Source: Mantamonas sphyraenae STR306
Taxonomy: Eukaryota > Protista > CRuMs
Assembly: GCA_026936335.1 (NCBI GenBank)
Contig: JAPMXV010000061.1
Coordinates: 62,001-126,000 of the forward strand
DNA length: 64,000 nucleotides
Direction: 5' to 3'
Positions 3,001 through 63,036 of this stretch are shown one piece after another. How positions within the stretch are numbered: the first letter of the stretch is position 1; each line of letters begins with the position of its first letter. The notes under the pieces were generated by a model that was not told where the DNA came from, made no database searches, and was given only the letters and a program-made list of their open reading frames with translations. The translations under genes were made by a program, and so were the position numbers.

Positions 3001-6000
3001 CACTGGTGCGTCGTTCACAGGAGTCACAGTCACGGTCACGCCAGCGGATGCCGATTCAGCTGCGCCGACGCCACTGTTGCCCTGATCGTTCACCAGCAGG
3101 GTGACTGTGTCTGTGCCAAAGAAGTTCACACTGCCCTGGTACTGCAGAGTGGACAGGGCCGCATTGATGGACGTCAGGTTGCCTGTGAAGCGCTGCAAGG
3201 GAGCAAAGACAACACCGGTGCCCGCGCTAAAGCTCAACCCGGCCGTGCTCGACAGGCGCACCTGCCCACTGGTACCGCTGAGATCGACCTGCACAAGGGC
3301 AGAACCAGCATCCACATCCGAGATGCTGAAGCCGGCCAGTGCCACAGCAGTGTCCTCGGCCACGGTGGCGGCGGGCGGAACAGTTGCCACAATCGGAGCG
3401 TCGTTCACAGCCACAACAGAGATGATCACATTGGCCATGCCCTGCAGTGCCGTGCCGTGCCCCGCGTGGCCACGGTCATCAATGTGCAGCGACAACAGAT
3501 CGGCCCCGTTGTAGTGCAGAGGCGCAGAGTACGCCACAGAGGCAAGCGCAGCCTGCACACGTGTCAACACACCCATAAACTGCAGTGACGCCGCTGCTTG
3601 GTGGTTGCTACTGTTAAAGAGCAGACCCTGCGTGGTGGCCAGCGAGATGTTGCCCACGCTGACGCTGACGTTCACTGCGTACATGTGCGTGGCCACGTCG
3701 TCGACATCGGACACGCTCAGACCAACCACCGCGCCCACTGTGTCTTCGTTCACAGACACGCTGCTGGGTCCCACGGCCGAAGGGGCGTCGTTGACCGCCT
3801 CCACATGAATGGGCAGCGTGGCTGACGCCGTGAGAGTGCCACCTGCACCTGTCACGCCCTGGTCGTCCACCGTCAGTGCAATGTCTTCGTTTCCGTTGAC
3901 GTGCAGGTTTCCTTGGTACACCAGTGTGGCCAGGGCACGGTTGAACGCAGTCACCGAGCTTGTGAAGCGCATCTCTGCGTCCTGCACTCCGTCGCCGAAC
4001 GTCCACGTCAAGCCTGTGGTGTTGGCCAGCCACATGACGCCCGAGGTGGCCTTGAGTACCACGTTGAGTTCCGATGCGCCAATGTCTGCATCTGTGACGC
4101 GATGGCACTCAATGTGAGCTGTGTGTCTTCGCTGACTGCAAAGCGGCTCGGCGTTGTTGGCACGGAAAGCACGGGCGCGTCGTTGATCGAGGCCACATTG
4201 ATGGGCAGGATCTTGGTGGCTGTGTTGGTAACAGATGTGCCGTTGCCCAAGTCGGTGGCAGCAAACTCCAGCTGATCCAGGCCGTAGTAGTGAGGTGTGC
4301 CAATGTAGCGCAGGGTGGCCAGCGCCGCGTTGGTCGACGTGATGTTGGCCTCAAAGACCATGCGTGTGTCGTTTGCGCCGGTGCTGCCCGACAGGAATGT
4401 CAGTCCCGCGGCGCTGCCCAGGGACAACAGGCCGTTTGCTGTGGTCATGTTTGTGCGCACGACGTTGTCGGCGATGTCAATGTCAAAAAGCACGATGGGC
4501 AACAGTGCGCTGAATGTGTCCTCGTCCACTGCCACGGGCGGAGGCAATGTGATCTTCAGGTCGTCGTTGACATTGTTCACAAACAGAGACAGAGCAAGGG
4601 GCGGCGATGCTTCCAGGGCACCGCCTGTGCCCGTGTTTCCGTTGTCACTCACTCGCACCAGCACGCTGTCTGCTCCGACATAGTTGGGTGCAGAAAGATA
4701 CAGGAGGGAGCCTAGCGCCTGGTTCATGGCCGTGATGGAAGTTGTGGAGAACAGCAGCGCCTGTGTCGAGTTGCCCATGTTGCCGCCGGATCCGTAGGTC
4801 ACCGACACACCCGACACGTTGAGCCACACACTGCCCACACCCACGGTGATGTTTGCACTCATGCCGCCCGATCCAACGTCGACGTCGGACACAGCCACGC
4901 CAGGCAGCGCGGTCACAGTGTCTTCGTCCACAGGCGGCGGCGCAGTGTTGCTGAGCGTGGGTGCGTCGTTCACGGCACTCACGGCGATGGCCACCGAGGC
5001 GGAAGCCGTCAAGACGTTGCCTTGTCCCACAGCACCGAGATCGCTGACCCACACACTCAACACGTCTGCGCCAACGTAGTCTTGGTTTCCTGTGTAAACC
5101 AGTCCCGGATTGGACAGGGCGTTTTGTAGCACAGTACGTGTGGCTACGATCTGCATGGCCGCGTCATCCAGTCCGTCACCCACCACAAAGGTCATCCCTG
5201 TGGTTGAGCCAAACGGCAGGCTCAATGTGCCCGACGTCACGCTGATGTTGAAGGCCATGAGATGAGTGCCCACGTCAACATCGCTGATGTTGATGCCACC
5301 AATGGTCAACGCCGTGTCTTCAGCCACTGCCTGTGCCCCCGGCACAGACAGCGTTGGCCCATCGTTCACAGGCAGCACCGTGATGGCGAGCACACGTGCA
5401 TCGGTGAGCACACCGCCTGCACCAGCGCCGCCTTCGTCACTGACCCGCACCTGCAGGCTGTCTGAGCCGTAGAAATCCACGTTGCCGCGGTACACAACCG
5501 ACGCCACGGCCGTATTGACCTGTGTGCGTGTGCCGCGGATGCTGATGGCGCTGCCGTTGTAAATTCCGCCCGCATACAGCACGCCCGAGCTCACACTCAT
5601 GTTCAGGGTCATGCTACCAGCTTCGACGTCGACGTCGCTCACAGACAGGCCCGTCACGGTCAGGTCGCCCTCTTCAAGAACCGAGGACAGCGACGCAGGG
5701 ACGGTGAGCACAGGAGCATCGTTCACAGCCGTGACGGTGATTCCCACGCTGGTGGCGTCGCTTTTGATGCCTCCCAGGCCGCTGTTGCCCTGGTCGTCCA
5801 CAACCACCGTCAGCGTGTCGCTACCCGTGTAGTGCAGGGCGGGACGGTAGACGAGCGAGCCCAACAGTGCGTTGATGGCTGTCAGATTGCCTGTCAGTTG
5901 AACCTGTCCCCCGCCTCCGTTCAGTGTCCCTTGTGTCACGTTGGCCACCAACGCCATGTTGGAACCGTCCACATCCACATCCGTCACCGACAGGCCCACC

Positions 6001-9000
6001 AACGTCAGCACTCCGTCTTCGGACACGCTTTGGCTGCCCACGGAGGCCGTCACGTTCGGCGCATCGTTCACAGGCGCCACCGTAATCACCACAGATGTGC
6101 TTGCGCTCAGCGACACGTACGGCATTCCCGTGTGGCCCCTGTCCGTAATGCTCGCGGCCAGTGTGATGTTGCCGTTATATTTGTCCGGAGGTGTTAGGGT
6201 CAGATGCGTCAGGGCAAGTTGCAGCTGTGCAAGGGTGCCCTGCACATTCCACGCCGCTGCTCCGTTGCTGCTCCCGTCCACAAAGTACAATCCGGTGGTG
6301 TTGCCCAGCTGCAAGGATCCTACCGTTGCGCTCATGTTCAACACCATGTCGCCCTGCCCCACGTCGATGTCGCTTATGCCAAACACGCCGTTCAGGCTCT
6401 GCACAGCGCCTTCATTCAGCTGCATGTATGCAGGCGATGCGGATATGGTCGGTGCATCGTTTACGGCGGTCACGGTAATGCCCAGAGTCAAGATATCGGT
6501 CAGACCGAGTGGATCACGAGCTACCACAGTGAGGACGTCGCCGCCGACGTAGTTACTGGGTGGGGTGTAAACCGTACCGTTGAGAGTGCCATACAACACG
6601 CTGTAGGTAATGGTCACATTTGTGTCGTCGACATCAGTCGCATTTACCGCCGGCAGTGTCACGCTGGTGTCTTCCGCCATGGTGATGTTGGTCGTGTTGG
6701 CGTCGACAAACCGCAGCACCGGGGCGTCGTTCACAGCCACCACCGAAATGGCAACCGTGGCATTTGCCCGTAGTCCTCCGCTGTCCTGAACATGGATGCT
6801 CAGCGTGTCTGCACCGTTGTAGTTTGCGGCGTACGTCACCCTGAGGGTGGACAGTGCCGCGTTGATGGCGGTAAGGGTGCCCGTCAGTTGTGTGGCATTT
6901 GCTGGCGACAGGGTGCCCACCTCCACGCTGACGTTGCATGACATTGTGGTGGCTGCAGCGTCCACGTCAACCACGGTTAAATTGCCCGCCACCAGCTGCA
7001 GAGGTACGTCCTCCAGTGTGCTCCACGCCACCGGTTCCACCGAGATCGTTGGAGCATCGTTCACCGCAAACACAAAGATCGGCTGGATGTACTTTGTGTC
7101 TGTGAGGGCGCCGTCGCTCACCTGCAACGTGATGATGGCTGCTCCGTTGAAATCCTGATCGCCCTGGAACACGAGACCACCGCCGAGTGCTGCGTTGAAG
7201 GCTGCCTGTGTGGCAGTAAAGCGCATCTCTTTGTCCAGATTCCCGTCGCCTGTGCCAGCGGAAAAGTTGAATCCTGTCACGTTGGCGATGGTCAGCGTGC
7301 CAAAGTCGCACTGCAGCACAAACGACAGTGGCTCGGCAAACGCATCCACGTCAGACACAGAAATGCCGTTGAACGTCAACGGTTGGTCTTCCTGTGCAGA
7401 CAGGGCACCCGGCACGGTGAGGACCGGTGCGTCGTTGACGGGGGTCACTGTGATTGGAGTGACAAAGGCGTCGTAGCTTGGGCCACCCAGGCCTTGCGCA
7501 CCGAGATCACTCACGCGCACGCTCAGCGAGTCCGGTCCGTTGTAGTGCAGGTTGCCGCGGTACACAAGCGTGTTGAGTACGGCGTTCGTGGCCGTGAGGT
7601 TGGCTACCAGCTGGATAGACGCTTGTCCGTTGATGGTTCCCTGGCTCACAGAGATGTTTGTGGACAGCATGTATGCGTCGACATCTACATCAGTGATCGA
7701 TGCGCCACTCAGCGTCAGATCTGTGTCTTCAGCCACTGTTTGTGCGCTTGCTGCGGCGCCGGCGAAAAGCTGCACCGGATCGTTGACGCTCTGCACCACC
7801 ACCGCGATGGAAGCGTTGCTGCGCAGGCCCTGCTCGTCCGAAAGAACCAGCCACACCGTGTCACTGCCGTAAAAGTGAACTTGAGAGGGCGTGTAGGTCA
7901 GGGCTGCCAGAGCTGCGTTAATGTTGACGAGCGTGTCATGCAGAAATGCCACGCTCAGGTTGCCGTGGTTGCTGCTCACGTTAAGACGTACGCGGTTAAG
8001 CCCCACGTCCACATCCGACACATTGATGCCAGTGATGTGCAGCACCGTATCCTCGCTCATCACTTGCGGGCCGGGAACGAAAATGACAATCGGATCGTTG
8101 ACCTCGAGGACAGCCACAGCCAAGCTGGCTGTGGCGTTGGCTCCCACGTTGTCATACACCGTGACAGCAATGGTGTCAGTGCCGTTAAAATGCAGGTTCG
8201 GGGTGTACACGAGGGTGGCCAGAGCAGCGTTCAGCGCCGTCAGGTTGGCCGTCAACGATGTCAGCGACAACGTCCCGTGACTGGCACTCAGCAGCACAGA
8301 CAAGTCGTGTGCGTACACATCTACGTCGGTGACGACGATGCCGCTCACGAGGAGGCTTGTGTCTTCCGAGGTATTGAGAGGCAGCGGCGACGGAAGCGAA
8401 GAAAAGGCGGGCGCGTCGTTCACCGGGACGATGCTCAGTGGCACGTGCACGGTGTCGTTAAGCCCGAGATCGTCGACGATTGAGATGATCAAGGTGTCAT
8501 TGCCGTAGTAGTGGGTGTTGGGCGTGTAGACGATGCCCGCACCGAGAGCAGCGTTGATCGCCGTCAAGTTGCCCGAAAGTGATGGAATAGACACAGAGCC
8601 GTGCATGACACTGGCTGTGAGCTGCATGGTGTTGGTAGTCACGTCCACGTCGCTGACAGCCACGGGCGAGAGCGTCACAGAGGTGTCTTCATCCAGAGTC
8701 AACAGCGACGCGCTGGCAAACAGTTGCGGCGCGTCGTTGACGGCTTGCACAACGATCACACTGGACGCATTGGCCGTCTTTTCTCCGCCGACACCAAACT
8801 CGCCTTGGTCGCTGACCCAGTAGCGGATGGTTTCGACGCCAAACGCGTGCGTGCGGGGACGGTACACGAGCGAAGCCAACAGGGCGTTCAGGTTGGCGAT
8901 GGAGTCGACGCGACTGAACGAGGAAACGTTGAGTGGCAACAGGACGCCAAGGGTGCCGTTGAGTGACAGCGAGACGTTGAGGCGAAGGGTGCCGCTGCCG

Positions 9001-12000
9001 AGGTACGCGTCGCTGTCGGACACGGCCAGACCGACCAGAGGCAGGTCTGTGTCCTCAGATGTGGTGATTGTGGACGCAGTGCTGTTCAGCGAGGGTCCCT
9101 CGTTGAAGTAGTCCACGCGGATGTACACAGAGGCAGCAACCGAGTAGTCCTCGTCGGCCAGGCCAATGTCGATCCGTGCGGGGCCAGCATAGCCTGGCAG
9201 CGGACGGAACACGAGGTTTTGCAGCAACGAGTTGGTGGCGTTCAGGGAAAGAGAGGCGTTGAAGGCTGGCAGCGCTGGCAAGGAGCCGTTGTGCACAGTG
9301 ATGTTCAGCGTCAGCAGCTGTCCAATATCCACGTCCGAAGCGGCGATGCCTGCAATGGTAAAGTCAAAGTTCTCCAGTGCCACCTGGAGCGGAGGCACAG
9401 TGAGGGAGGGCGGATCGTTGACGGCCGCGATGCGCACATGGATGTACGCTGTGGATTCACCACCGGCTGGGTCGCGCACTGTGTACTGGAACACATCGAG
9501 CCCGTTTGCGTTGGGCGCAGGCGTGTAGTACAGAGTGATGTTGCGATCCGTGGTGGTATTGGCAAACACCGCCGTGCCCAGGGTGGGCAGGAGCGGGCCG
9601 ACATGAAAGGTAAACAGGGAGTGGTCGGCGTCCGTGGTGTTGATCTGTACGCTGAACGGCGTGTCTTCGGTTGCGTTGTAGGTGTGGTTGTTGGCCAGCG
9701 GCAGGTCATTGACCGACGTGACGTTGACAACGACGACGCCGACGAGCGAACGCGCCTCAAAGATGTCATCCACGTAGTAGGTAAAGTTTGCGACGCCGTA
9801 GACGTGTGCCAGGGGCGTAAAGGTAAAGAGACCAAAGTTGGTGTCTGTGACAACCACGGTACCGAGCCCAACGGGTTGGCTGGCAACCACAAAAGTGAGC
9901 GGGTGCGCTTCCTTGTCGAACCCAAAGAGGTTGCCCGTGTAAGGCACGTCCTCAGGCGTGTGGATGTACGTCAAGTTGGCAATGACGGGGGCGGTGTTCT
10001 CAATGGCCACGAGGATAAACACGGTGGCGTTGGTGAGGGAATTGAGCGGCGGATCGCCACGATCACGCACGTCAAACACAAAGCTGTCTGTGCCGTTGTT
10101 GCCATCTGCTGGCAGGTAAACAAATTCCCCAGTCTGGTTGTTGGTGATATTGAGCGAGCCGAGCTTGGGCTGCTCCAGGATGCGAAACTCCAGCGTGTCA
10201 TCTTCGACGTCGGTGGCGTTGAGTTTGCCCACGTACGCCGTGTTTTCGTCCGTCTCCAATTTGCCGTTGAGTGGCACGGGAGGGTCGTTGACGGGCGTGA
10301 CAACAAAGGTAAAGACGGCTGTGTCACAGAGGCCCTCGACGTCGCAGACCTTGAGGGTTGCGGTTTGGTTGCCGTTGAAATTGAGCGAGGGCACAAAGGT
10401 GACGATTCCGGTGGACGGATTGATGGTCAGGGTGCCATTTGCTGGCAGTGTGAGAGCTTGGGCAGAGGCCAGGTTGATGGCCGAGTCTGCGTCGTAGGTG
10501 TAGGGGCTGATAGAAAACTGAAGGGTGGTGTCCTCGGCGACGATCTGCAGGCCGTCGGAAAACTGCGGGTAGCAGTTGCAGTCGTCGTTGTCCTTGACAC
10601 AAGCCGTCTCGCAGTGCGAACCGACGTAGCCAAAGTCGCAGAAGCACTGGCCGTCACTGAGGCACTGTCCGCGAGCGCTGCAGTTTGTGGTTGCGTTGCA
10701 CTGGATGGAACACTGGGCAGTGAGCGGACCGACCCAACCGTCGTCACATGAGCACAGATTGTTGCCGATACATGTGCCGTGGCCGTTGCAATAGGTGTCT
10801 CTGGAGCAGTTGTACTGACACAGGCTGCCCGTGAACCCGTCGGGGCAACTCTTTCCGGTGGCCGGGTCTTCGCACTCACCGTTGATGCTGTGGCAGACGG
10901 CACCGTTTTGGCAGGCACAGGACGTGCAGTCGTCGCCAAACCAGTTGCCTGCACAGCTGCAGGTTCCGCAGTAGCACTGGCCCTTTGCGTTGGGACAGCC
11001 CGCAGGACAGGGTTTCTTTGTGCAGACGGCAAACTGGCTCAACGTCTGCGAGCACTGCTCACAGGTGCATGTGCCGTCGGAGTTGCATGTGCCAAGGCCG
11101 CCACAGATGGAACCTGAGCCGTCGGTGGCGCTGATGCCGGGGCATGCAGAGAGACAATTTGCGCCGTAGAAGCCGTCGCGGCACTGGCAGGTGGTGGTGT
11201 TGGGCAACAGGTAACCCGACATTTGCGAACAGTCTGCGTTGAGGCAGCGTCCACACGTGGTTGCACACGATGGGCCCGTTGTGCAATCCGAGGTGGTTGC
11301 GTCGCGCCCGCAGGGTGTCGAGGCCGTCTCGTTGCAGTAGGTGCCCTTGAATCCACAAGCGCACTGGCAAGCGCCGGTGGTTTGATTGCAGATGCCGTTG
11401 CCATAGCACGGGCGCTGGGAGCCGTCTGGCATGGAAACGACAAAGGGGCAGGTGAATTGGCAGCCGTCGCCGTAGGTTGTGTTGCTGCAGGAGCATGCCT
11501 TGTCGCCTGCAAAGTTGCAAGTGCCATTGTTGGAGCAGTAGCTGGCGTGTCCACGCTTGTTGACACCAACGAGAGGTTCCGGGGCGCCGGACGGGCTGAT
11601 GGCGCCTGCGCAGGTGGTGCACGTGTCTGTGGCAAAGTAGGTGCAGTTCTGACAAGGTTTGCCTGCGGAACCCGAGAGACACTTGCCTGTGTCGTGGCAC
11701 CATCCGCAGCCAGCGCGAGAGACGCAGTCGCCGCAGTTGCAGAGATCGGAGCAGGTCTGGCAGCACTCGGTGTTGAAGGATTGGGGAAATCGAGAGCCGA
11801 TGCACTGGGTGGGGCCAAACTCGCGTCCAAGACACACGAGGTTTTCGTTGCACCAGCCGCAGATGGGATCTGCGGTGCAGTCGCCACAGAATTGATACTG
11901 GGAGCAGTATTGAGCGGTTGCAGCGCTGCAAGTTTTGTCGATGATGCGGATCCCTTTGCGGGCCTCGTCGAGCGGGATGTCAAAGAAGGAGATTGCGTTT

Positions 12001-13979
12001 GTAAAGGCGTCGTACTCAGCGAGACGGAAGCCCGTGAGACCTCCCTGAACATCCATGGCGTAGTTCATGTCGACGGAGCGAGGCATGGTGCCCAAGACCA
12101 TGCCGTCGGAGCAGCAGGCAACCCAACGGAAGTAGAAATCACCCACGCCCGTGTTTGTGTTCCAGAAGTAGCAGTCGTTGCTGGAGCCAACACAGCTAGC
12201 GGTCGAGTCGGGCGCGTTGTCGTCCTTGACGAGGACGCTGACACCTGTGCCGCCGACGATTTTGGAATCGACGTTGACGAGGACATTGCCGCCGTCTGCA
12301 TTGCCAGCTTTGTCGAGGATCCAAAGGACGGAGCTATTGTAGGTCTCGTCGATGGCAATGACGAGGGTGGCGTACTCTGCAGTGGCAAGTCCTGTGTTTT
12401 CGGAGGAGCTCGAGGGAAAATTGTACGAGTAGAACATGGTGGCTCCAGACACGGTGTTGCAGTCGTTGGGGTTGGGGCCTTGAGACGGGATACGGTATCG
12501 ACCGCGGTTGTCCGGGGCGGCCCCGACGCCGCTGCATGTCTTTGTGGTCATGGGATGGCCGGGGGGAAAGTGGGTCACAGGGGTGAAATCGCGCTTCTGC
12601 GGGCCGCTAGGATTGGAAAGATCCCATTGGACCTCGTAGCAGAAGTTTGATTCACCCGTGTCTGTGAGGGTGGTGTGTGGGATGGGCGAGCGATGTGAGA
12701 TAGGGCTGCGGGTGGGGGTGTGGGCAGACGAGAAAATCCGTACAGGTTTGGCATTGGTCGCCAGTCCACGGGGAGATGCAGCTGCATGTCTTGATGGTGG
12801 TACCAACGCAGGTGCCATGGTATGATCCGCCACAGGGGGCGTTCTGGTGGCCCGGGCAGGTATCTGTGTGGAGAATCGGGGCCAGGTCCGGGTCAGGGTT
12901 GGGCGTTCGGAAACGGCTGCTGGGTGCAACGAGCGGGCTGTGGGGTGGAGGAGGCAGCAACTGACCCGAGTAGTTGTGTGCGCCATATTTGGTGTCGAAA
13001 AAGGCGTCGAGAAGCAGGCGCTGCTGGTCAGGAAGAGCGTAGTTGAAGTAAAGGAGCTCTGCAAGGTGGCCGTCGAAGTAGCTGCCCTTGGCGGCAATGA
13101 CCCCGTCGTGGAAGCGTGTGTTTGTGCCGGCACAGCCGATACGCACATCACCTGTGTATGTGGCGGAGGGAGGATTTGGGCAGTTGTGGGCGGGTGGGCG
13201 GTCAGGGTGAGCGTGCTGCAGGGCGGGATAAAGCTTCTGGGCGGTTTGGGGCCGGCGGGAAACAAGCAGGCGGACGGACCTGTGTGCTGGGAGAGGTAGG
13301 AGACGCCGGTTGCAAGCTCCATGAGCTGGCCATTCATGTAGAGGGAGAGCTGTGTGGAGGCGCCATCAAAGATGAGGACGAGCTTGTATGGTGTGTTGGT
13401 ACGTAGTCCCGGGAAGCGCCAAAAGTCGGCTTCGCGATTGTCAATGAGGTATTTGGAGTAAGGGCTGGCACCTGTGGTGGACCACATCATGGCATAAAGC
13501 ATGTGCGAGTGGATGTAGATGCTGACACCAGCCGTTTGGTCGCCCTGCTCCCAGAGTAGCTGGCGGGTTGTGAGGTCGCCACTGGTTTGAAAGACCATGG
13601 CAATGGTGAGGGCTTGATACCCCGCAGCATTGTCGTTGATGTCGTTGTTGGGGTTCTTTGTGATTTCGTAGCACTCGGAAGAGGTGCGGACAAAGTTGAG
13701 AGCCCGCCGGCTGTTGATGACGTTGTTGGTGTTACTGGGCGGGTTGTTGGACTGCGTGGCGTCGTTGCTGTTTCCAGAGACGTCTGTCCATGTGGCAAGA
13801 TTGCCTGTGTTGTGATTGTCCGCACAAAACCATGCTGTGGCATTGAGGTTGAAGGATTCAATGCCCGCGTGGCAGGTGTTGTGGCTGGCGTATGCTGCGG
13901 GCAGGGTGGCCCAGAGCACAGCCAAACAGCCAAACAGCATGGTCCATGTCCATGCGTTGGAGATGCGGCGCCTTGCCAT
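1..13979 (-). CDS. Giant secreted/surface adhesin-like protein: signal peptide, LamG/ConA-like domain, EGF, PSI and EGF-like repeats, then at least ~30 cadherin-like (VNDAP...EDT) Ig-fold repeats; 3' end lies beyond the window
   Basis: ATG at 13979 (MARRRISNAWTWTMLFGCLAVLWATLPAAYA, signal-peptide-like). GT-AG introns 13279-13152, 12965-12864 and 12743-12662 restore LSQHTGDVRIGC...YSDTCPG...CQTYTGESNFC. PSI-like CGDCTADPICGWC and CGDCVSRAGCGWC. Repeats of ~100-130 aa (VNDAP, EDT, vsDVD, Y..n..G.D.l.v.v.D) continue after an apparent 1-bp deletion near 4100 and stay open to position 1. Confidence 0.9.
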
Positions 13980-14067
13980 GGCGGTAGTTTGGATTTGTGT
14001 TGGGTTGGCGGGTGGAGCCGCGCGCCGGGGGACGAAGCAGAAAGGCGTTGACACAGGCGGGGACGTG
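13980..14067. promoter_or_regulatory. Putative bidirectional promoter (88 bp) between the giant adhesin and the nucleotide-sugar transporter
   Basis: Head-to-head ATGs at 13979(-) and 14068(+); location inferred, no motif proven. Confidence 0.5.
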
Positions 14068-15034
14068 ATGGCGCATGGCGAGGTGCTGTTGGCCACATTG
14101 ACGTATGGGTGTGTGAGTGCTGCCATGACACTGTTGAACAAGAGCGTGGTTGGCGCATGGGGTTTTGACGGGGTGTTTGTGTTGATGCTGTGCCAGCAGG
14201 TGGTGACGGTGGTGCTCATGTGGACGCTGCGTGCATGGTCTGTGGTGTCGTTTGCCACACAGGTCAGTGAGAGTGGGATGGAGCTGTTTGGGATGGCGTG
14301 TCTGTATGTGGGAAACGTGGGGGTCGCCCTGGCGGCCATGGCCCGCGTGACCCTGTCTGCGTACGGGGTGCTGAAGCGAGTGACCATTGTCCTGGCCATG
14401 TTTGCCGAATGGCACTTCCTGCACGCGGTGCCGAGCCTGCGCGTGCGCGTGAGCGTGGGTCTGCTGCTGTTCGGGACGCTGGTGTCGGCTGCCGGCGACT
14501 TGCGCTTCCGTGCCGACGGGTACGCGTTGGCGCTGTGCAGTTGTGCAATGCAGTGTGCGTACATGGTTCTTGCAAAGAAAACGGGCGTGCGTGGACGGCT
14601 GGGCGTGTTTGGCGTGACTTTCTGGAACTCGTTTCTGGCTGTCCCTGTGACGCTCTTGCTGATCGGCTTGCGGGACGAGTGGCAGACGACGATTGCCTTT
14701 GAGGCGTGGGCAGAGCCGCAGTTTGTGTGGTCTGTGATGTGGAGTGTTGTGCTTGGGGTCGCGCTGACGTTTTCGATTTTCTGGGACCAACGCTGCAGCT
14801 GGACCGCTGACGGTCACGGTGGTGGGTCAGCTCAAAACTGTGGTGGTGACAATCATTGGCATGGTTGTTTACGGCGTCCACATGGACCGCACGGGAGTGC
14901 TGGGCTTGCTTTTGAACACAGCGGGCGGTTTCCTGTTTGTGCAGGCAAAACACGGCGTGCAAGCAGAGAGCGCTGTGGGGATGGGGGCATCTGGAGGCGA
15001 CGGTCAAGATGAAAAGGCAAAGGCCAAGGTGTGA
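14068..15034 (+). CDS. Nucleotide-sugar transporter, SLC35D/TPT (DMT) family
   Basis: MAHGEVLLATLTYGCVSAAMTLLNKSVV...YGVLKRVT...FWNSFLAVP...GPLTVTVVGQLKT, multiple TM helices; one extra G at ~14784 (TGGG) joins ORF 13816-15012 to ORF 14819-15034. Confidence 0.85.
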
Positions 15035-58397: not shown

Positions 58398-61300
58398 ATG
58401 GCCTGCTACGCCTTTGGCCATCTGTGGCACGAACAATTGGGCAATGTGGCAGCGCCACACGCACGCGAACTGACCGTACCATGTGTGGCAGAGGGGCAAT
58501 ATGTGGTGCATGTGGACAGCGGCGAGCGGCACGTGATGGCCTTGAGCAGTGAGTTGCCGTTTTGTGCCACATCTCCTCTACGGTGTGACCACGGCGAATC
58601 GGGGTGCTGACACACAGAGCAACCATGACACCATGCACATGTGGTCACAGACGAAGGGGACGTGTACATGTGGTATGGCGGCGCACGGGCAGCCGACGAG
58701 CTGGCCGAGTTTTTGGACAACGGTCAGAAGGGCCCCGCCTGGACTCGCGACTCTAGCATCGATCCTCTGGCCATGGAGACACAAGGGGTGCCCCACAGCG
58801 GCCTCCACGACAACGGACGGCCCCACTCGCCGCCTATGCACCGTGACATGGGCGTGTCGAGCCGGGAGGAGAGCCACGAGGCAGCGAGCAGCGGGGACGA
58901 ATCCAATCCCGCCGGCGTGCGCTTCATGGACTTTAACCCCGACGAGAGCAAAGGTGGCGCAGAGGGAGAGGAGGGAGAGGAGGAAGAGGAAGAGGAAGAC
59001 GGGAGGAGGAGGAGGAGGAGGAAGAGGAGATGGAGGCGCTGGGACAGGCGCAGGCGGCGTTTTTGGATGCGGAGCTTGCGCTGCTGGGCTGGTTTGAAAA
59101 AGTGGAAGCGCTGGAAGGGGTGCATGTGGAGATGGTGGATTGTGGTGGGGGCCACCAGGGAGCCATTACTGTGGATGGGGACCTGTGGATGTGGGGGGAG
59201 AACAGCAGCGGGCAGTTGGGACTGGGACACTGCTTCAGCACGCAGCAGCCGCAGCTTGTGCAAGTGCTGGAGGGCAAACAGGTGTGTGCGCTGTCGTGTG
59301 GCAAGTCGCACACAGCAGCAGTGACACGGTCGGGTGACCTGTACACGTGGGGTCAGGGGGTGTTTGGCCAGTTGGGCCAGGGCCGTTTGCAGCGCACGTT
59401 TTGCAGGCGGCCGCGGTTTGTGGGCGCGTTGCTGGGGGTGCCGATTGTGGATGTGGCGTGTGGCACGGACCACACGCTGGCACTGAGTCTGGACGGCAGT
59501 GTGTACGCGTGTGGCAACAACCAGTTGGGCCAACTGGGCACGGGCGACTGCAAGCGACGGGACACCTTTGTGCGCCTGGAGTACTTTCACACCCACGGCA
59601 TACGCGTGCGTCAGATTGTGGCTTCCAACGCCTTTTCCGCCGTGGTGGACGAGCAGGGCACGCTGTACACGTTTGGTGACGGCTACTTTGGCCAGCATGG
59701 CGACGAGGAGAGCGAGCCCGCACACCTGCCCAGCACAGAGTGCATGTCACGCATTGTGGCATGGAATGCACACCTGGAAGAGTTTGACCACGAGCGGTCG
59801 GCACGTGTGGTGCAAGTCACCTCGGGTGGCAACTACCTCGCAGTGCTCACCGACGACAACTGCGTGTGGAGCTGGGGCTGTGGCGAACACGGACGCCTGG
59901 GCCATGGGTACCCTCGTGCCACCACCACCGAGAGTGACGATGACAATGATGACAGTGATGAGGAGGGTAGCAGCGGTGAGGGTGTCCACACGCAAACGGC
60001 CACGGAACGCACGCCCCGGGTGGTGGAAACACTGCTGGAAACACAGGTGTTGGCCATCAGCGGTGGATTGCGCCATCTGGTGGTGCTCACGGGCGAGCCG
60101 ATTGTACGCAAGATGGACGCTGCGTTGGTGGCAGCCATGCAGGAGGAGGATGAGGACGTGCTGGGGGACTTGGTGACGAGCATGGAGCACGAGGAGGCGT
60201 TGCGGACGGCGTACAACGAGGCCATCCGAGAGTGCTACGCACACTTTGAGGCGATGGAGAGCAGTGCACGACAGAGCATCGAGGAGGAGATGTGGCGTAA
60301 CGTGGATCTGGACATGGCGTCGATTCACGCCGCGTGCGACCACAAAGTGGCGGCTGAGAAGCGGGCACACATGATTGCGGTGGCAGATCCGGAATTGTCC
60401 GAGGCGCAGGAGGACCGCATGGTGGAGGAGCACGAAGCACGGCTGCAGGCGGTGGAGGAGGAGCGTGCGCGTGCGCAGCAGCGTGTGGAGAAGCGCATGG
60501 AGAGGCAACTGACGGTGCAGCTGCTCAACGCAAAGAAGGAAATCAAGAGTCTGCGCAGCAAGGCCCTGAGGGAGGTGGAATATCACTTTGAGCAGCAGCT
60601 GCACGACCACGGCTACGACAACCACGACGACCACGACCGCCACTCGGTGCATCCCATGACGCCCGAGCCGCACGAGGACGGGCCTTCGGTGAACTTTTGG
60701 CCGGTGGCCGAGGAGGACGAAGAGGAAGAGGACGAAGAGGAGGAAGAGGGACGGCATCAGCAGCGGGGCAATGGCACGGATGGAGGAGGAATGAGCAGGG
60801 CGGAACAGTTGCGGATTGCCTCAAGCGCATGGGGGGCTCATTTGATGGAGGAACGCCTGCAGGGCAAGTCGTTGCGCAGGGAGGTGGAGAATGTGTTGGC
60901 ACGTCCGGATGACATGCACATCAAGGTGTGCCAGGCCATGTTGCTCCTGTTTGGCGGGGAGGTGGGCAGCCATGCAAACGCACGTGGGTGGCGCGAGTGG
61001 CAGGATGTGTTGCGGGAAGTGCACTCGGCAGCATTGCAGCAACAGCGACAGAGGCAACAGCGGCCACAGAACAATGGGGACGGAGACGGGGCAGGCAACA
61101 GTGACGACGAGGAGGAGGAGGGTGCGGTGGAGCAGGACACCGGAAGCGTGACGTCGTCGGCGGTGGGCAGCAGCCACGACGGCGACGCAGACAGAGAGGA
61201 GGACACACGCAACAGCAGCCGTGGCGGGGAGGATGGTGATGATGAGGAAGACGAGGGTGGAGAGGACGACAACGAGGACGCACAAGAGAGTGTGGACACA

Positions 61301-61741
61301 GACTTGCTCACGGCCATGCTGCAGTTTGACAAGTCGGCTGTGAGCTACGAGACGTATCTGCAGATGAAGGCGTACCTGAGTGACGAGACGCTGACGATGG
61401 AGGCGTTGTGCAGGCGCGCGCCCGTGTTGGCCATGATGTGGAGCTGGGTGGTGTTCCTGTTCCGACGCATCCGCCTGGACCTGGACATTGCCGGCATGAT
61501 GGCGTTGGACGTGACCATTGAGCAGCAAGAGGCAGAACGAGCCGCAAAGGAGGCGGAGATGGCAGCCGCACAGGCATTGGCCGCAGAGCAGGACGAGCAG
61601 CATCGTTCTCGAAGCAGCACGTCACGTGCAAGCAGCAGCAAACGCAGCGGCACGGCCTCGAGCAGCACAGGCGGACGAGCCACGCGCAGAGTCAAAGGAG
61701 AGTCCCGTGGAAGGAGCCGGCAGGGTGGAGCGAGGGAATGA
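58398..61741 (+). CDS. RCC1-repeat protein with coiled coil and C-terminal dynein-stalk microtubule-binding-domain-like module
   Basis: RCC1 blades (GDLWMWGENSSGQLGLG, SCGKSHT, LYTWGQGVFGQLG, ACGTDHT, WSWGCGEHGRLGHG); intron 58549-58650; indel in the GAG run at ~59002; C-terminal MTBD-like motifs. Confidence 0.85.
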
Positions 61742-61855: not shown

Positions 61856-63036
61856 TTACTGGTCGCCAGAGTACTTGGTGCGGCGCGCGGGGCCCTTGGT
61901 GGGCTTGGCCAGGAAGTCGGTAAACTCCTGGTACGGGGTCTTGCGCAGCTCGTTCTGCTCCCACAGCTCGGGGCTCAGGTAGGCGTACGTGTTGGCAATG
62001 GCGTAAAAGGTAGCCTTGATCAGGTTGCCCATGGTCTTGGTGCGACCGGAGGTCTGGGTGTACACGTCACCCACACCAGCCATGCTCAGCAGCTTCTTGG
62101 GCACAAGGGCGGCCACCAGACCGGTACCCTTGGGTGCAGGCACCAGACGCACAGTCACGGAACCGCACTTGCCGCTCACCTTGGTGGGCACAGTGTGCGG
62201 GGCACCGATGTTGTTGCCCCAGTAGCCCAGACGCACAGGGATCACAGACAGCTTGGCCAGAGTGATGGCACCACGGATGGCCGTAGCCACCTCCTTGGCG
62301 CACTTGACACCCAGACCCACATGGCCCGAGTAGTCACCCACAGCCACAAACGCCTTGAAGCGAGTGCGCTGACCGGCACGCGTCTGCTTCTGCACAGGCA
62401 TGATCTTCATGACCTGTTGGACACGGGAGTCGAGAGGAGGGTGGGTGGGTGGGGAGTGGGATGTGTGAGTGGGAGGCACACGGGTGGGTGGGGGAAAGGA
62501 CAGTCAAACAGACACCCGCAGCGCTCAGCTGCATTTTCCCACACACAGCGCACACACAAAAACGCACCTCGTCCTTCAGCGTGGGCAGGAAAAAGTCGAT
62601 GATGGGAGCTTCCTTGATCGGCAGAGAGAAGAGGTAGATCTCCTCAATGCTCTTGATCTTGCCACTGTGTGTGTGTGTGTGTGGCGGGTGGGGGGTGTGA
62701 GATTGTGGGTCGGTGGAAAAGCGCATGCGATGCAATCCCTCTCTCGCACACGGTCACACAGGACACAGGACAACCGCGACCCATGCCACACTCTCAAACG
62801 TACGCCTGCACCAGACGGCCCAGCTTGGTAGCGGGCACCCAGGCCTCCTTGTCGTCGCCACGACGGCCACGGCCGCGGCCACCGCCACGTCCACCGCCAC
62901 GGCCACCACCACGGCCTCCGCCACGGCCACCGCCACGGCCTCCACCACGGCCACCACGCTCACCGCGCTCGCCGCCACGGCCGCCGAAGCCACCGCCGAA
63001 TCCGGATCCAGAGTTGTTCGATGCACCCTCGCTCAT
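61856..63036 (-). CDS. RPS2: 40S ribosomal protein S2 (uS5)
   Basis: RGG-rich N-terminus, [58 protein letters not shown]; two introns (~62803-62665, ~62567-62414). Confidence 0.98.

What the first reader, a model, noticed from the sequence alone, without database searches (positions are those of the whole stretch)
60850..61480. RCC1 beta-propeller fused to a stand-alone dynein stalk microtubule-binding domain (motor-less microtubule tether?)
Seen: after the RCC1 blades and a long coiled coil comes RREVENVLARPDDMHIKVCQAMLLLFG...W...DLLTAMLQFDKSAVSYETYLQMKAYLSDETLTMEALCRRAPVLAMMWSWVVFLFRR, then more coiled coil. Knowledge: the dynein heavy-chain MTBD consensus is roughly ELKS..KPP..V..VMEAVCILLG...W......FL..L.NFDKDNI......LK.YL.DP.F....V...S.AA..LC.WV, flanked by the stalk coiled coil. 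Inference: this is an MTBD with no AAA ring, carrying a ~90-aa Q/acidic insertion (about 61030-61300) after the conserved Trp. It could anchor an RCC1 propeller (GEF or scaffold) on axonemal or root microtubules, with the acidic insert mimicking tubulin tails as a regulator.
Basis: partly seen in the sequence, partly recalled or inferred. Interest (0 to 1): 0.8.

Follow-up and report, generated by a model that had tools for sequence, protein, structure and literature searches.

The report
RCC1 protein with motor-less dynein MTBD
A gene of the gliding flagellate Mantamonas encodes an RCC1 beta-propeller protein whose tail carries a divergent copy of the small domain that dynein motors use to grip microtubules, with no motor attached, so it is probably a microtubule tether of a kind not yet described.

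Summary
One open frame (59030-61741, +, 903 aa) holds an RCC1-like propeller (Pfam E 7.8e-61), a coiled coil, and a C-terminal domain homologous to the dynein microtubule-binding domain (MTBD). The MTBD is split by a 91-aa disordered insert (61025-61297).

Evidence for MTBD homology:
- An exhaustive phmmer search finds tandem stand-alone MTBD proteins at E 3e-10. These match Pfam MT at 4e-34 and dynein structures at 1e-11.
- MTBD profiles built without this protein hit it at E 1e-5 to 1e-7, in two colinear pieces.
- hhalign gives P 1.4e-7.
- An AlphaFold model made from only two Mantamonas sequences has dynein MTBD-type entries as its nine best PDB matches (eight dynein structures and one Toxoplasma microtubule-MAP chain, Z up to 8.8; next hit 4.5).
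- The hallmark Pro and both Trp are kept.

There is no AAA ring and no long stalk. The insert lies between H3 and H4, not at the axonemal flap site. It is acidic here (net -25) but not in the M. plastica orthologue (+4), so the tubulin-tail-mimic idea is not supported. A basic Ser/Arg tail (+10) is conserved.

Microtubule binding is inferred, not shown. The same genome has at least three further motor-less MTBD genes. No RNA data could be laid on the gene.

The parts
58398..58549 (+). Probable first coding exon (ATG; one RCC1 blade), ending at a GTGAGT donor
   Evidence: Read directly from the sequence. The Pfam RCC1 repeat match is below threshold (E 0.0094, 17 bits against a cut-off of 21.7). 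The main ORF's RLD match starts only at profile position 84 of 363, so N-terminal blades are expected upstream.
58550..58649 (+). Probable 100-nt GT..AG intron with a ctgac branch-like site
   Evidence: Sequence reading. It removes two in-frame stops between two RCC1-like segments. It is not confirmed by RNA.
58650..59029 (+). Probable second exon (rest of a blade, then an acidic low-complexity stretch). It needs a frame change inside a GAG/GGA repeat (about 58954-59024) to join the main ORF
   Evidence: Either a 71-nt purine-rich intron (58954-59024, GT..AG, length = 2 mod 3) or a 1-nt assembly error would restore the frame. This is undecided. The joined product was not built or searched.
59030..61741 (+). 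Main open frame, 903 codons plus stop
   Evidence: The stop-to-stop open frame is 934 aa.
59102..60100 (+). RCC1-like beta-propeller domain (residues about 25-357)
   Evidence: Pfam PF25390 E 7.8e-61, PF00415 E 1.7e-49, PF13540 E 3.8e-35. The closest solved relatives are UVR8, HERC2, HERC1 and RPGR (E 1e-61 to 1e-52), well above Ran-GEF RCC1 (7e-27).
60110..60640 (+). Charged helical or coiled-coil region (residues about 361-537)
   Evidence: Judged from sequence composition. It was not modelled here. No Pfam family matches it.
60587..60787 (+). Linker with a conserved Pro-rich motif (PMTPEP..NFWP) and an acidic run
   Evidence: It aligns with the first 50 residues of the M. plastica transcript product P0001. 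This shows that the coding sequence continues upstream of the MTBD module.
60797..60871 (+). Helix before the domain (the CC1 position), low model confidence
   Evidence: AF2 helices at model residues 4-21 or 4-23, with pLDDT 43-63. It is partly missing in P0001.
60872..61024 (+). MTBD-like domain, first half: H1 (with the conserved Pro), H2 (..LLLFGG), a 10-aa H2-H3 loop, and H3 (GW..WQDVL)
   Evidence: hhalign of A3 against the MTBD alignment A2: P 1.9e-4, template columns 30-53. HMM piece: profile 15-47. In the 20-row alignment the Pro is invariant and the H3 Trp is nearly invariant. The structural alignment spans it.
61025..61297 (+). 91-aa disordered Gln/Asp/Glu/Gly-rich insert in the H3-H4 loop (net charge -25)
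   Evidence: pLDDT below 50 in both models. An insert of 75 aa at the same site in the M. plastica transcript product has net charge +4.
61298..61486 (+). MTBD-like domain, second half: H4 (DLLTAMLQFDK), H5, and H6 (..MMWSWV..)
   Evidence: hhalign P 1.4e-7, probability 94%, template columns 62-121. Own-genome profile search E 1e-5. Pfam MT positions 152-249, E 0.056. Best non-self match in the genome is a dynein heavy chain MTBD, E 0.006.
61487..61612 (+). Helix continuing from H6 (the CC2 position), about 45 aa
   Evidence: One AF2 helix over model residues 212-275. It is shorter and not conserved in P0001.
61595..61738 (+). Basic Ser/Arg-rich disordered tail (net +10)
   Evidence: The M. 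plastica orthologue has a tail of the same composition and charge (net +10).

Best explanation
This is one protein-coding gene of Mantamonas (most likely M. sphyraenae). Its product combines four parts: an RCC1-like seven-blade-type propeller, a long charged helical region, a divergent but genuine homologue of the six-helix dynein microtubule-binding domain (MTBD), and a basic Ser/Arg tail. There is no AAA+ ring and no long antiparallel stalk. The MTBD is interrupted in its H3-H4 loop by a long disordered insert. The most likely mechanism is as follows. The MTBD-fold domain, helped by the basic tail, docks on the microtubule lattice. It thereby holds the propeller, which is a protein-interaction platform of the UVR8/HERC/RPGR type rather than a close relative of Ran-GEF RCC1, on cytoskeletal or flagellar microtubules. 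The insert would act as a lineage-variable, probably regulatory, loop near the binding face. Shown here: the domain composition, the homology, the fold, and the continuity of the open frame. Inferred: microtubule binding, the tethering role, and any role for the insert. The domain belongs to a wider set of motor-less MTBD proteins, which is not named in any library or source consulted here. That set includes at least three other genes in the same genome and tandem-MTBD proteins from other eukaryotic contigs.
For: Homology by sequence:
- phmmer of residues 587-862 against 1.84 billion representatives returns three proteins. One is the M. plastica orthologue (E 1.7e-24). The other two are tandem-repeat proteins (E 3.1e-10 and 9e-7).
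- Those two repeat proteins are clear MTBDs: Pfam MT E 4e-34 and 2e-28, and solved dynein MTBDs down to E 1.2e-11.
- An MTBD HMM built without the window protein scores it E 1.7e-6 (Z=10,000), in two colinear pieces on either side of the insert.
- The whole-genome profile search gives E 1e-5.
- hhalign gives P 1.4e-7 for the second half and 1.9e-4 for the first half, at adjacent template columns.
- In its own genome the best non-self match is a dynein heavy chain MTBD.
- The hallmark Pro (H1), Trp (H3) and Trp (H6) are kept.

Fold:
- An AF2 model from a two-sequence Mantamonas alignment, without templates, has dynein MTBD-type entries as its top nine of 48,161 PDB representatives: eight dynein structures (one, 9fqr_Xl, of uncertain chain identity) plus a Toxoplasma intraconoidal-microtubule MAP chain. 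The best are 3err_B (Z 8.8, rmsd 3.7, 123 residues, spanning both halves), 8i3j_A (8.7), 5ayh_A (8.5) and 6l4p_B (7.5). The next hit scores 4.5.
- With a 20-row alignment the core pLDDT rises to 82-94 and Z to 12.9.
- In the ESM Atlas the only good row is a PF12777 cluster.

Fusion:
- There are no stops between the propeller and the MTBD.
- The orthologous transcript product aligns from residue 520 onwards, upstream of the MTBD module.

Support for binding:
- The basic tail (+10) is conserved in both species.
Against: - Pfam MT is below its gathering score (12.9 against 24 bits).
- Foldseek E-values are weak (1.5 and 0.16), although the top rows are all dynein.
- The H1 region is acidic or neutral where dyneins carry Lys, and the near-invariant Ser of H6 is Ala.
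- The domain core is about neutral (-2), while most dynein MTBDs of this genome are +4 to +9.
- A 91-aa insert with net charge -25 sits in a loop next to helix H3, which contacts tubulin in dyneins. It could hinder binding to the acidic microtubule surface.
- The stalk that sets dynein's affinity state is absent.
- The M. plastica product starts at the position matching residue 519, so conservation of the RCC1 fusion is not shown.
- No RNA evidence is available for this genome.
- The 5' part of the gene model needs a frame change.
Confidence: 0.6

Rival explanations
1. The domain is a real MTBD homologue by descent and fold, but it no longer binds microtubules. It has been re-used as a helical protein-interaction module, or as a binder of some other filament or partner, in an RCC1 scaffold protein.
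For: H1 lacks the basic residues of dyneins and the H6 Ser is replaced. The core net charge is about -2, against +4 to +9 in most dynein MTBDs of the same genome. There is a strongly acidic insert next to H3. There is no stalk to set a high-affinity register. The stem branch to the two Mantamonas sequences is long (2.6 changes per column).
Against: The Pro and both Trp, and the hydrophobic core, are conserved between two divergent Mantamonas species. A conserved basic tail typical of lattice-binding proteins follows the domain. Some bona fide dynein MTBDs of this genome are also neutral or acidic.
Confidence: 0.25
2. Gene-model artefact: the propeller and the MTBD module are made as separate proteins, through an internal transcription or translation start near residue 520-587. 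In that case the 'fusion' does not exist at the protein level.
For: The M. plastica transcript product is only 330 aa and begins with Met at the position matching residue 519. No RNA run could be laid on the window. The genome has other small stand-alone MTBD genes, for example a 174-aa ORF.
Against: The frame is uninterrupted for 903 codons, with no stop between the domains. The region just before residue 520 is a continuing charged helix with no sign of an intergenic break. Trinity contigs are often truncated at the 5' end.
Confidence: 0.1
3. Chance resemblance: this is a generic helical bundle with a few dynein-like motifs and no common ancestry with the MTBD.
For: Single-sequence matches to Pfam and PDB are weak (E 0.056 to 1.8). 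Helical models can reach a middling Z by chance (notes).
Against: Independent profile, profile-profile, whole-genome and exhaustive-database searches are all significant, and colinear for both halves. The nine best of 48,161 structural matches are all dynein MTBD-type entries, with a gap from Z 8.8 to 4.5. The hallmark residues are conserved.
Confidence: 0.05

Closest known systems
Dynein heavy chain microtubule-binding domain (Pfam PF12777 'MT'; structures 3ERR, 5AYH, 8I3J, 6L4P, 2RR7)
   Same: The same six-helix fold (Z 8.8 to 12.9). The order of H1-H6 is colinear. The H1 Pro, H3 Trp and H6 Trp are conserved. Helices enter and leave at the CC1 and CC2 positions.
   Different: There is no AAA+ ring and no long antiparallel stalk. 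The match is below the Pfam cut-off. H1 is not basic. There is a 91-aa insert between H3 and H4. The domain is fused to an RCC1 propeller.
Unnamed tandem stand-alone MTBD proteins (P0002 746 aa, P0003 479 aa, P0006; the own-genome C62 gene, L023)
   Same: They are motor-less proteins made of MTBD-type domains. They are the closest sequence relatives outside Mantamonas (E 3e-10). A profile of them scores this protein higher (30.9 bits) than a profile of the genome's own dyneins does (18.8 bits). The tree places it weakly among them.
   Different: They carry 3-5 canonical, basic, uninterrupted MTBD repeats, pass the Pfam cut-off, and have no propeller. This protein has one divergent, split copy. 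None of them has a name or a described function in the sources seen.
Axonemal dynein 'flap' (DNAH7, dynein-c)
   Same: It is a lineage-specific insertion in an MTBD loop that changes how the domain meets the lattice (PMC6629372). The Mantamonas proteins also have about 10 extra residues at that same H2-H3 site.
   Different: The flap is a 13-residue beta-hairpin between H2 and H3. The large insert here is 91 disordered residues between H3 and H4.
RPGR (retinitis pigmentosa GTPase regulator) and other RCC1-like-domain proteins (UVR8, HERC1/2)
   Same: The propeller is of this type (E 1e-52 to 1e-61). Like RPGR-ORF15, the protein combines an RLD with long Glu/Gly-rich acidic stretches and a basic C-terminus. 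RPGR homologues are common among the word-based hits.
   Different: There is no evidence of orthology. RPGR has no MTBD. None of the 27 RCC1 relatives listed carries PF12777.
Toxoplasma intraconoidal-microtubule MAP chain 9YA2_L
   Same: It is a solved, lattice-bound, non-dynein chain whose globular domain is among the structural matches (Z 6.4 and 7.4, 111-114 residues). The paper describes a globular ICMAP2 domain binding between protofilaments every 8 nm (PMC12819142).
   Different: No sequence similarity was detected. I could not verify which protein chain L is. The paper does not call the domain MTBD-like. This is a lead only.

Membership tests
Dynein MTBD / stalk (Pfam PF12777 MT) | Score at or above the Pfam gathering threshold (24 bits) | tested here: not met
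   12.9 bits, E 0.056, profile positions 152-249 only. The locus was not picked up by the PF12777 genome scan.
Dynein MTBD / stalk (Pfam PF12777 MT) | Significant profile-level homology to bona fide MTBDs | tested here: met
   HMMs built without this protein: E 1.7e-6 and 1.3e-7 (Z=10,000), and 1e-5 genome-wide. hhalign P 1.4e-7 and 1.9e-4, colinear. phmmer E 3e-10 to MTBD-repeat proteins.
Dynein MTBD / stalk (Pfam PF12777 MT) | Six-helix H1-H6 fold | tested here: met
   AF2 model plus VIA-align: the top nine PDB representatives are all dynein MTBD-type entries (eight dynein structures, one Toxoplasma MAP chain). Z is 8.8 for the two-sequence MSA and 12.9 for the 20-row MSA. This is a predicted structure, not an experimental one.
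Dynein MTBD / stalk (Pfam PF12777 MT) | Hallmark residues: Pro at the CC1/H1 junction, Trp in H3, Trp in H6 | tested here: met
   P40 is invariant, and W68 and W220 are nearly invariant, in alignment A4. All three are present in the window protein and in P0001. The near-invariant H6 Ser is Ala.
Dynein MTBD / stalk (Pfam PF12777 MT) | Long antiparallel CC1/CC2 stalk joining the domain to AAA4/AAA5 of a motor ring | tested here: not met
   There are no AAA_8 or AAA_9 matches anywhere in the ORF, unlike the genome's dyneins. The flanking helices are about 25-45 aa and not conserved in the orthologue.
Dynein MTBD / stalk (Pfam PF12777 MT) | Binds the tubulin intradimer interface through H1, H3 and H6 | not testable with these tools
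   A complex job with alpha- and beta-tubulin plus the domain exceeds the 1000-residue limit. The charge pattern is ambiguous.
RCC1-like domain proteins (PF25390 / PF00415) | Repeated RCC1 blades scoring above the Pfam cut-offs | tested here: met
   206.8 bits (cut-off 150), 166.6 bits (cut-off 21.7) and 119.2 bits (cut-off 22).
RCC1-like domain proteins (PF25390 / PF00415) | Guanine-nucleotide exchange activity on Ran or another GTPase | not tested
   The domain is closer to UVR8, HERC and RPGR than to Ran-GEF RCC1. The catalytic residues were not examined.
Motor-less MTBD proteins (unnamed: P0002, P0003, L023, L025, L026) | An MTBD-type domain in a protein without a dynein motor | tested here: met
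   This protein is the only one of the set with an RCC1 propeller and a split domain.

The most novel reading that the evidence does not exclude
The dynein MTBD is not confined to dynein. It would be an autonomous, ancient microtubule-binding module that exists as a family of motor-less MAPs. These include single-domain, tandem and fused forms, with at least four genes in Mantamonas and tandem forms in other eukaryotes. This RCC1 fusion would then be a new class of microtubule tether, and the family would bear on how dynein acquired its track-binding tip.
Probability: 0.45. Interest if true: 0.8.

Novelty: new variant of a known kind. Interest (0 to 1): 0.66.

Why it matters
The MTBD is usually treated as a part of the dynein heavy chain, with its affinity set by the stalk and the ATPase ring. 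A stalk-less, motor-less copy fused to a propeller would show that the fold can work, or be re-used, on its own, especially alongside several other motor-less copies in a deep-branching eukaryote (CRuMs). It would give a small, tractable system for asking what the MTBD does without register control. It would add a candidate family of microtubule-associated proteins. It would also open a testable route to the origin of dynein's microtubule contact. For Mantamonas, which glides on a trailing flagellum, it points to a candidate linker between microtubular structures and an RCC1-type interaction platform.

Tried and rejected
- The word-based homologue search of the C-terminal part found nothing. 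This says little, because low-complexity words dominate the query.
- A two-sequence profile that included the insert, searched against PDB, gave only a chance hit. The halves had to be treated apart.
- Foldseek on both models ranked dynein MTBDs first, but without significant E-values. The insert breaks local alignment.
- hmmalign in glocal mode pushed the first half into an insert state and was not used.
- RNA evidence: none was listed for this stretch.
- Literature searches found no description of a non-dynein MTBD. The terms were non-motor MTBD, PF12777, dynein-like MTBD, the Toxoplasma ICMT paper and the bovine sperm axoneme paper. This is absence in the held library only.
- The identity of PDB chains 9fqr_Xl and 9ya2_L could not be established.
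- No RCC1+PF12777 architecture appeared among the 27 RCC1 relatives listed. That sample is small and biased towards acidic proteins.
- A tubulin complex prediction was not sent, because it exceeds the size limit.
- Trypanosomatid origin, my first impression from GC content and TG repeats, was rejected because the genes have introns and because of the assembly statistics.
- Steps left out on purpose: no insert-deleted or exon-joined sequence was built or searched. The exons and the domain halves were searched apart, by reference.
Full report
**Source and gene context.** The window is G000:C61:62001-126000 of a 25,061,354-base genome in 78 contigs, with about 60% G+C. These figures equal those published for the FALCON assembly of Mantamonas sphyraenae: 25.06 Mb, 78 contigs, 59.19% GC (PMC10492846). 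The only close relative of the C-terminal part in 1.84 billion representative proteins is a Mantamonas plastica transcript product. I therefore take the organism to be M. sphyraenae. This is an inference. The genome has introns. The neighbouring RPS2 gene on the minus strand is in three pieces, and this gene has a clean 100-nt GT..AG intron at 58550-58649.

**The observation.** ORF 59030-61741 (+) encodes 903 aa.
- Residues 25-357 are an RCC1-like propeller: PF25390 E 7.8e-61, PF00415 E 1.7e-49, PF13540 E 3.8e-35. Its closest solved relatives are UVR8, HERC2, HERC1 and RPGR (E 1e-61 to 1e-52), not Ran-GEF RCC1 (7e-27).
- A charged helical region follows (about residues 361-537), then a linker with an acidic run.
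H1-H3 are at 60872-61024, a 91-aa insert at 61025-61297, and H4-H6 at 61298-61486.
- A helix of about 45 aa follows, then a Ser/Arg-rich tail.

**Is it an MTBD? Sequence evidence.** Single-sequence evidence is weak but points one way.
- Pfam MT is the only family matched by the last 346 aa (E 0.056, 12.9 bits, below the 24-bit cut-off, profile positions 152-249).
- The only PDB sequence hits are dynein MTBDs (E 0.8 to 1.8).
- The best non-self match in the organism's own genome lies in the MT region of a dynein heavy chain with AAA_8-MT-AAA_9 (E 0.006).

Stronger tests settle the question.
- An exhaustive phmmer search with residues 587-862 returned just three proteins. One is the M. plastica orthologue P0001 (E 1.7e-24). 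The other two, P0002 (E 3.1e-10) and P0003 (E 9e-7), consist of three to five tandem, canonical MTBD-type domains without any motor. They match Pfam MT at E 4e-34 and 2e-28, and solved dynein MTBDs down to E 1.2e-11.
- An HMM grown from one P0002 repeat over the genome's dynein loci, without the window protein, scores the window ORF at E 1.7e-6 (Z=10,000). The match is in two colinear pieces, profile 15-47 before the insert and 43-100 after it. The next best of 572 window frames has E 24.
- A whole-genome six-frame search with a 26-row MTBD alignment (A2) hits window positions 61292-61456 at E 1e-5.
- hhalign of the two-species alignment against A2 gives P 1.4e-7 (probability 94%) for the second half. 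For the first half alone it gives P 1.9e-4, at the immediately preceding template columns.
- In a 20-row MAFFT alignment both halves fall into register. The H1 Pro is invariant, and the H3 and H6 Trp are nearly invariant and present here.

**Is it an MTBD? Fold evidence.** An AlphaFold2 model was made from only the two Mantamonas sequences, without templates. Its core pLDDT is 70-85 and the insert is disordered. It was aligned to all 48,161 PDB representatives.
- The nine best matches are all dynein MTBD-type entries: eight dynein structures (the chain identity of one, 9fqr_Xl, is unverified) and a Toxoplasma intraconoidal-microtubule MAP chain (9ya2_L).
- The best are 3err_B (Z 8.8, rmsd 3.7, 123 residues, model 4-239, so across the insert), 8i3j_A (8.7), 5ayh_A (8.5), 6l4p_B (7.5) and 2rr7 (7.4).
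- The next hit scores Z 4.5.
- In the ESM Atlas the only good row is a PF12777 cluster (TM 0.58 by target).
- A second model used a 20-row alignment that includes MTBDs, so it is not independent. Its core pLDDT reaches 82-94 and Z reaches 12.9, 12.8, 12.1 and 10.8 against the same structures.
- Foldseek ranks dynein MTBDs first for both models, but with E 1.5 and 0.16.

I conclude, at about 0.9, that the domain is a divergent homologue of the dynein MTBD.

**What it is not.** The ORF has no AAA module. The helices at the CC1 and CC2 positions are short, poorly predicted and not conserved in P0001. 'Stand-alone MTBD' is therefore accurate and 'dynein stalk' is not.

**The insert.** The large insert lies between H3 and H4. 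The known axonemal flap lies between H2 and H3 and is 13 residues long in DNAH7 (PMC6629372). The Mantamonas proteins also have about 10 extra residues at the flap site.

The insert is 91 aa with net charge -25 here. In M. plastica it is 75 aa with net charge +4 and an Arg/Ser/Lys-rich centre. Its position and disorder are conserved, but its acidity is not. This argues against a conserved tubulin-tail-mimic role. Because P0001 comes from a transcriptome, the insert is coding sequence and not an unspliced intron, at least in that species.

**Function.** Points in favour of microtubule binding:
- The fold and its core residues are conserved across two species that share only 31-38% identity here, depending on the alignment.
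- A basic Ser/Arg tail of net +10 follows the domain in both species.
- The nearest relatives are basic tandem MTBD proteins.

Points against:
- H1 lacks the dynein lysines.
- The H6 Ser is Ala.
- The core is about neutral, while most of the genome's dynein MTBDs are +4 to +9.
- The acidic insert sits next to H3.

I put microtubule binding at about 0.55-0.6. The propeller type suggests a protein-interaction platform rather than a Ran exchange factor, but that was not tested.

**Relation to other motor-less MTBDs.**
- A profile of stand-alone MTBDs scores this protein higher (30.9 bits, E 1.3e-7) than a profile of the genome's own 15 dynein MTBDs does (18.8 bits, E 6.8e-4).
- A maximum-likelihood tree puts the Mantamonas pair, on a long stem, among the P0002 and P0003 repeats. 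Support is weak (62/87).
- The same genome holds further motor-less loci: a gene on C62 with three MTBD repeats (L023; Pfam MT E 1.9e-8), a gene on C13 with one MTBD plus a basic low-complexity region (L025), and a 174-aa ORF on C58 (L026).
- P0002 is a single-exon gene on a 51-kb eukaryotic contig from an environmental assembly.
- None of these proteins carries a functional name.
- I found no paper describing a dynein-type MTBD outside dynein in the held library.

**Gene model.**
- Upstream of the ATG at 59030, frame 0 holds an RCC1-like first exon (58398-58549; RCC1 repeat E 0.0094), the intron, and a second exon.
- Joining that second exon to the main ORF needs a frame change inside a GAG/GGA repeat at about 58954-59024. 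The cause could be a 71-nt purine-rich intron or a one-base assembly error. This is undecided.
- I did not build or search the joined product. The exons and the domain halves were searched apart, by reference.
- The fusion of propeller and MTBD rests on the uninterrupted 903-codon frame. P0001 aligns from residue 520 onwards and begins with Met at the position matching residue 519. It therefore shows coding continuity upstream of the MTBD module, but it does not show the RCC1 fusion in M. plastica.
- No RNA run was listed.

**Verdict.** The core of the interpretation, a motor-less MTBD on an RCC1 protein, is supported. The stalk and the acidic-mimic ideas are not. The tethering function remains an inference. 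Earlier first-stage notes on this genome mention other MTBD-like proteins. I checked two such loci myself.

Noticed in passing
L023 (G000:C62:34751-38056), ORF 91-2256 + and the next exon: A second non-motor gene in the same genome, with three MTBD-type repeats (Pfam MT E 1.9e-8; profile E 1e-25 to 3e-34). The third repeat is split by an intron-like frame change.
   Followed up: partly
L025 (G000:C13:182400-185800), ORF 1400-2737 +: A protein with one MTBD-type domain (profile E 2e-16), a long Lys/Arg-rich low-complexity region, a coiled coil and a YDALTDPH motif. It has no motor domains.
   Followed up: partly
L026 (G000:C58:282000-283800), ORF 709-1233 -: A 174-aa ORF that is little more than one MTBD-type domain (profile E 4e-8).
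   Followed up: partly
L021 (G000:C60:196067-199876), minus strand: A divergent dynein-like frame with weak MT (E 1.8e-10) and AAA_9 (E 5e-11) matches. Its MTBD is strongly acidic (net -18).
   Followed up: no
window 58954-59024: A frame change is needed inside a GAG/GGA repeat to link the upstream RCC1 exons to the main ORF. The cause is either an odd purine-rich 71-nt intron or a 1-nt assembly error in a low-complexity run.
   Followed up: partly
window 61856-63036, minus strand: A ribosomal protein S2 (uS5) gene in three exons, with a Gly/Arg-rich N-terminus. It converges on this gene, with about 115 nt between the two stops.
   Followed up: no
window 60587-60700 (residues about 520-557): A short motif (PMTPEP..NFWP) in the otherwise variable linker is conserved between the two Mantamonas species. 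It may be a docking motif.
   Followed up: no
PDB chains 9ya2_L and 9fqr_Xl (structural matches): Two chains of microtubule-bound assemblies, Toxoplasma intraconoidal microtubule and bovine sperm doublet. They match the model at Z 6.2 to 9.2, at residue numbers that do not look like a dynein heavy chain MTBD. They may be solved examples of non-dynein MTBD-like folds. Their identity was not established.
   Followed up: partly
window 4008-14564, minus strand: A 3518-aa open frame, the longest in the window. It was not examined.
   Followed up: no
window 60980-61009 (H2-H3 loop): Both Mantamonas proteins have about 10 extra residues, ending in a conserved N.RGW, at the site where axonemal dyneins carry the flap.
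   Followed up: no
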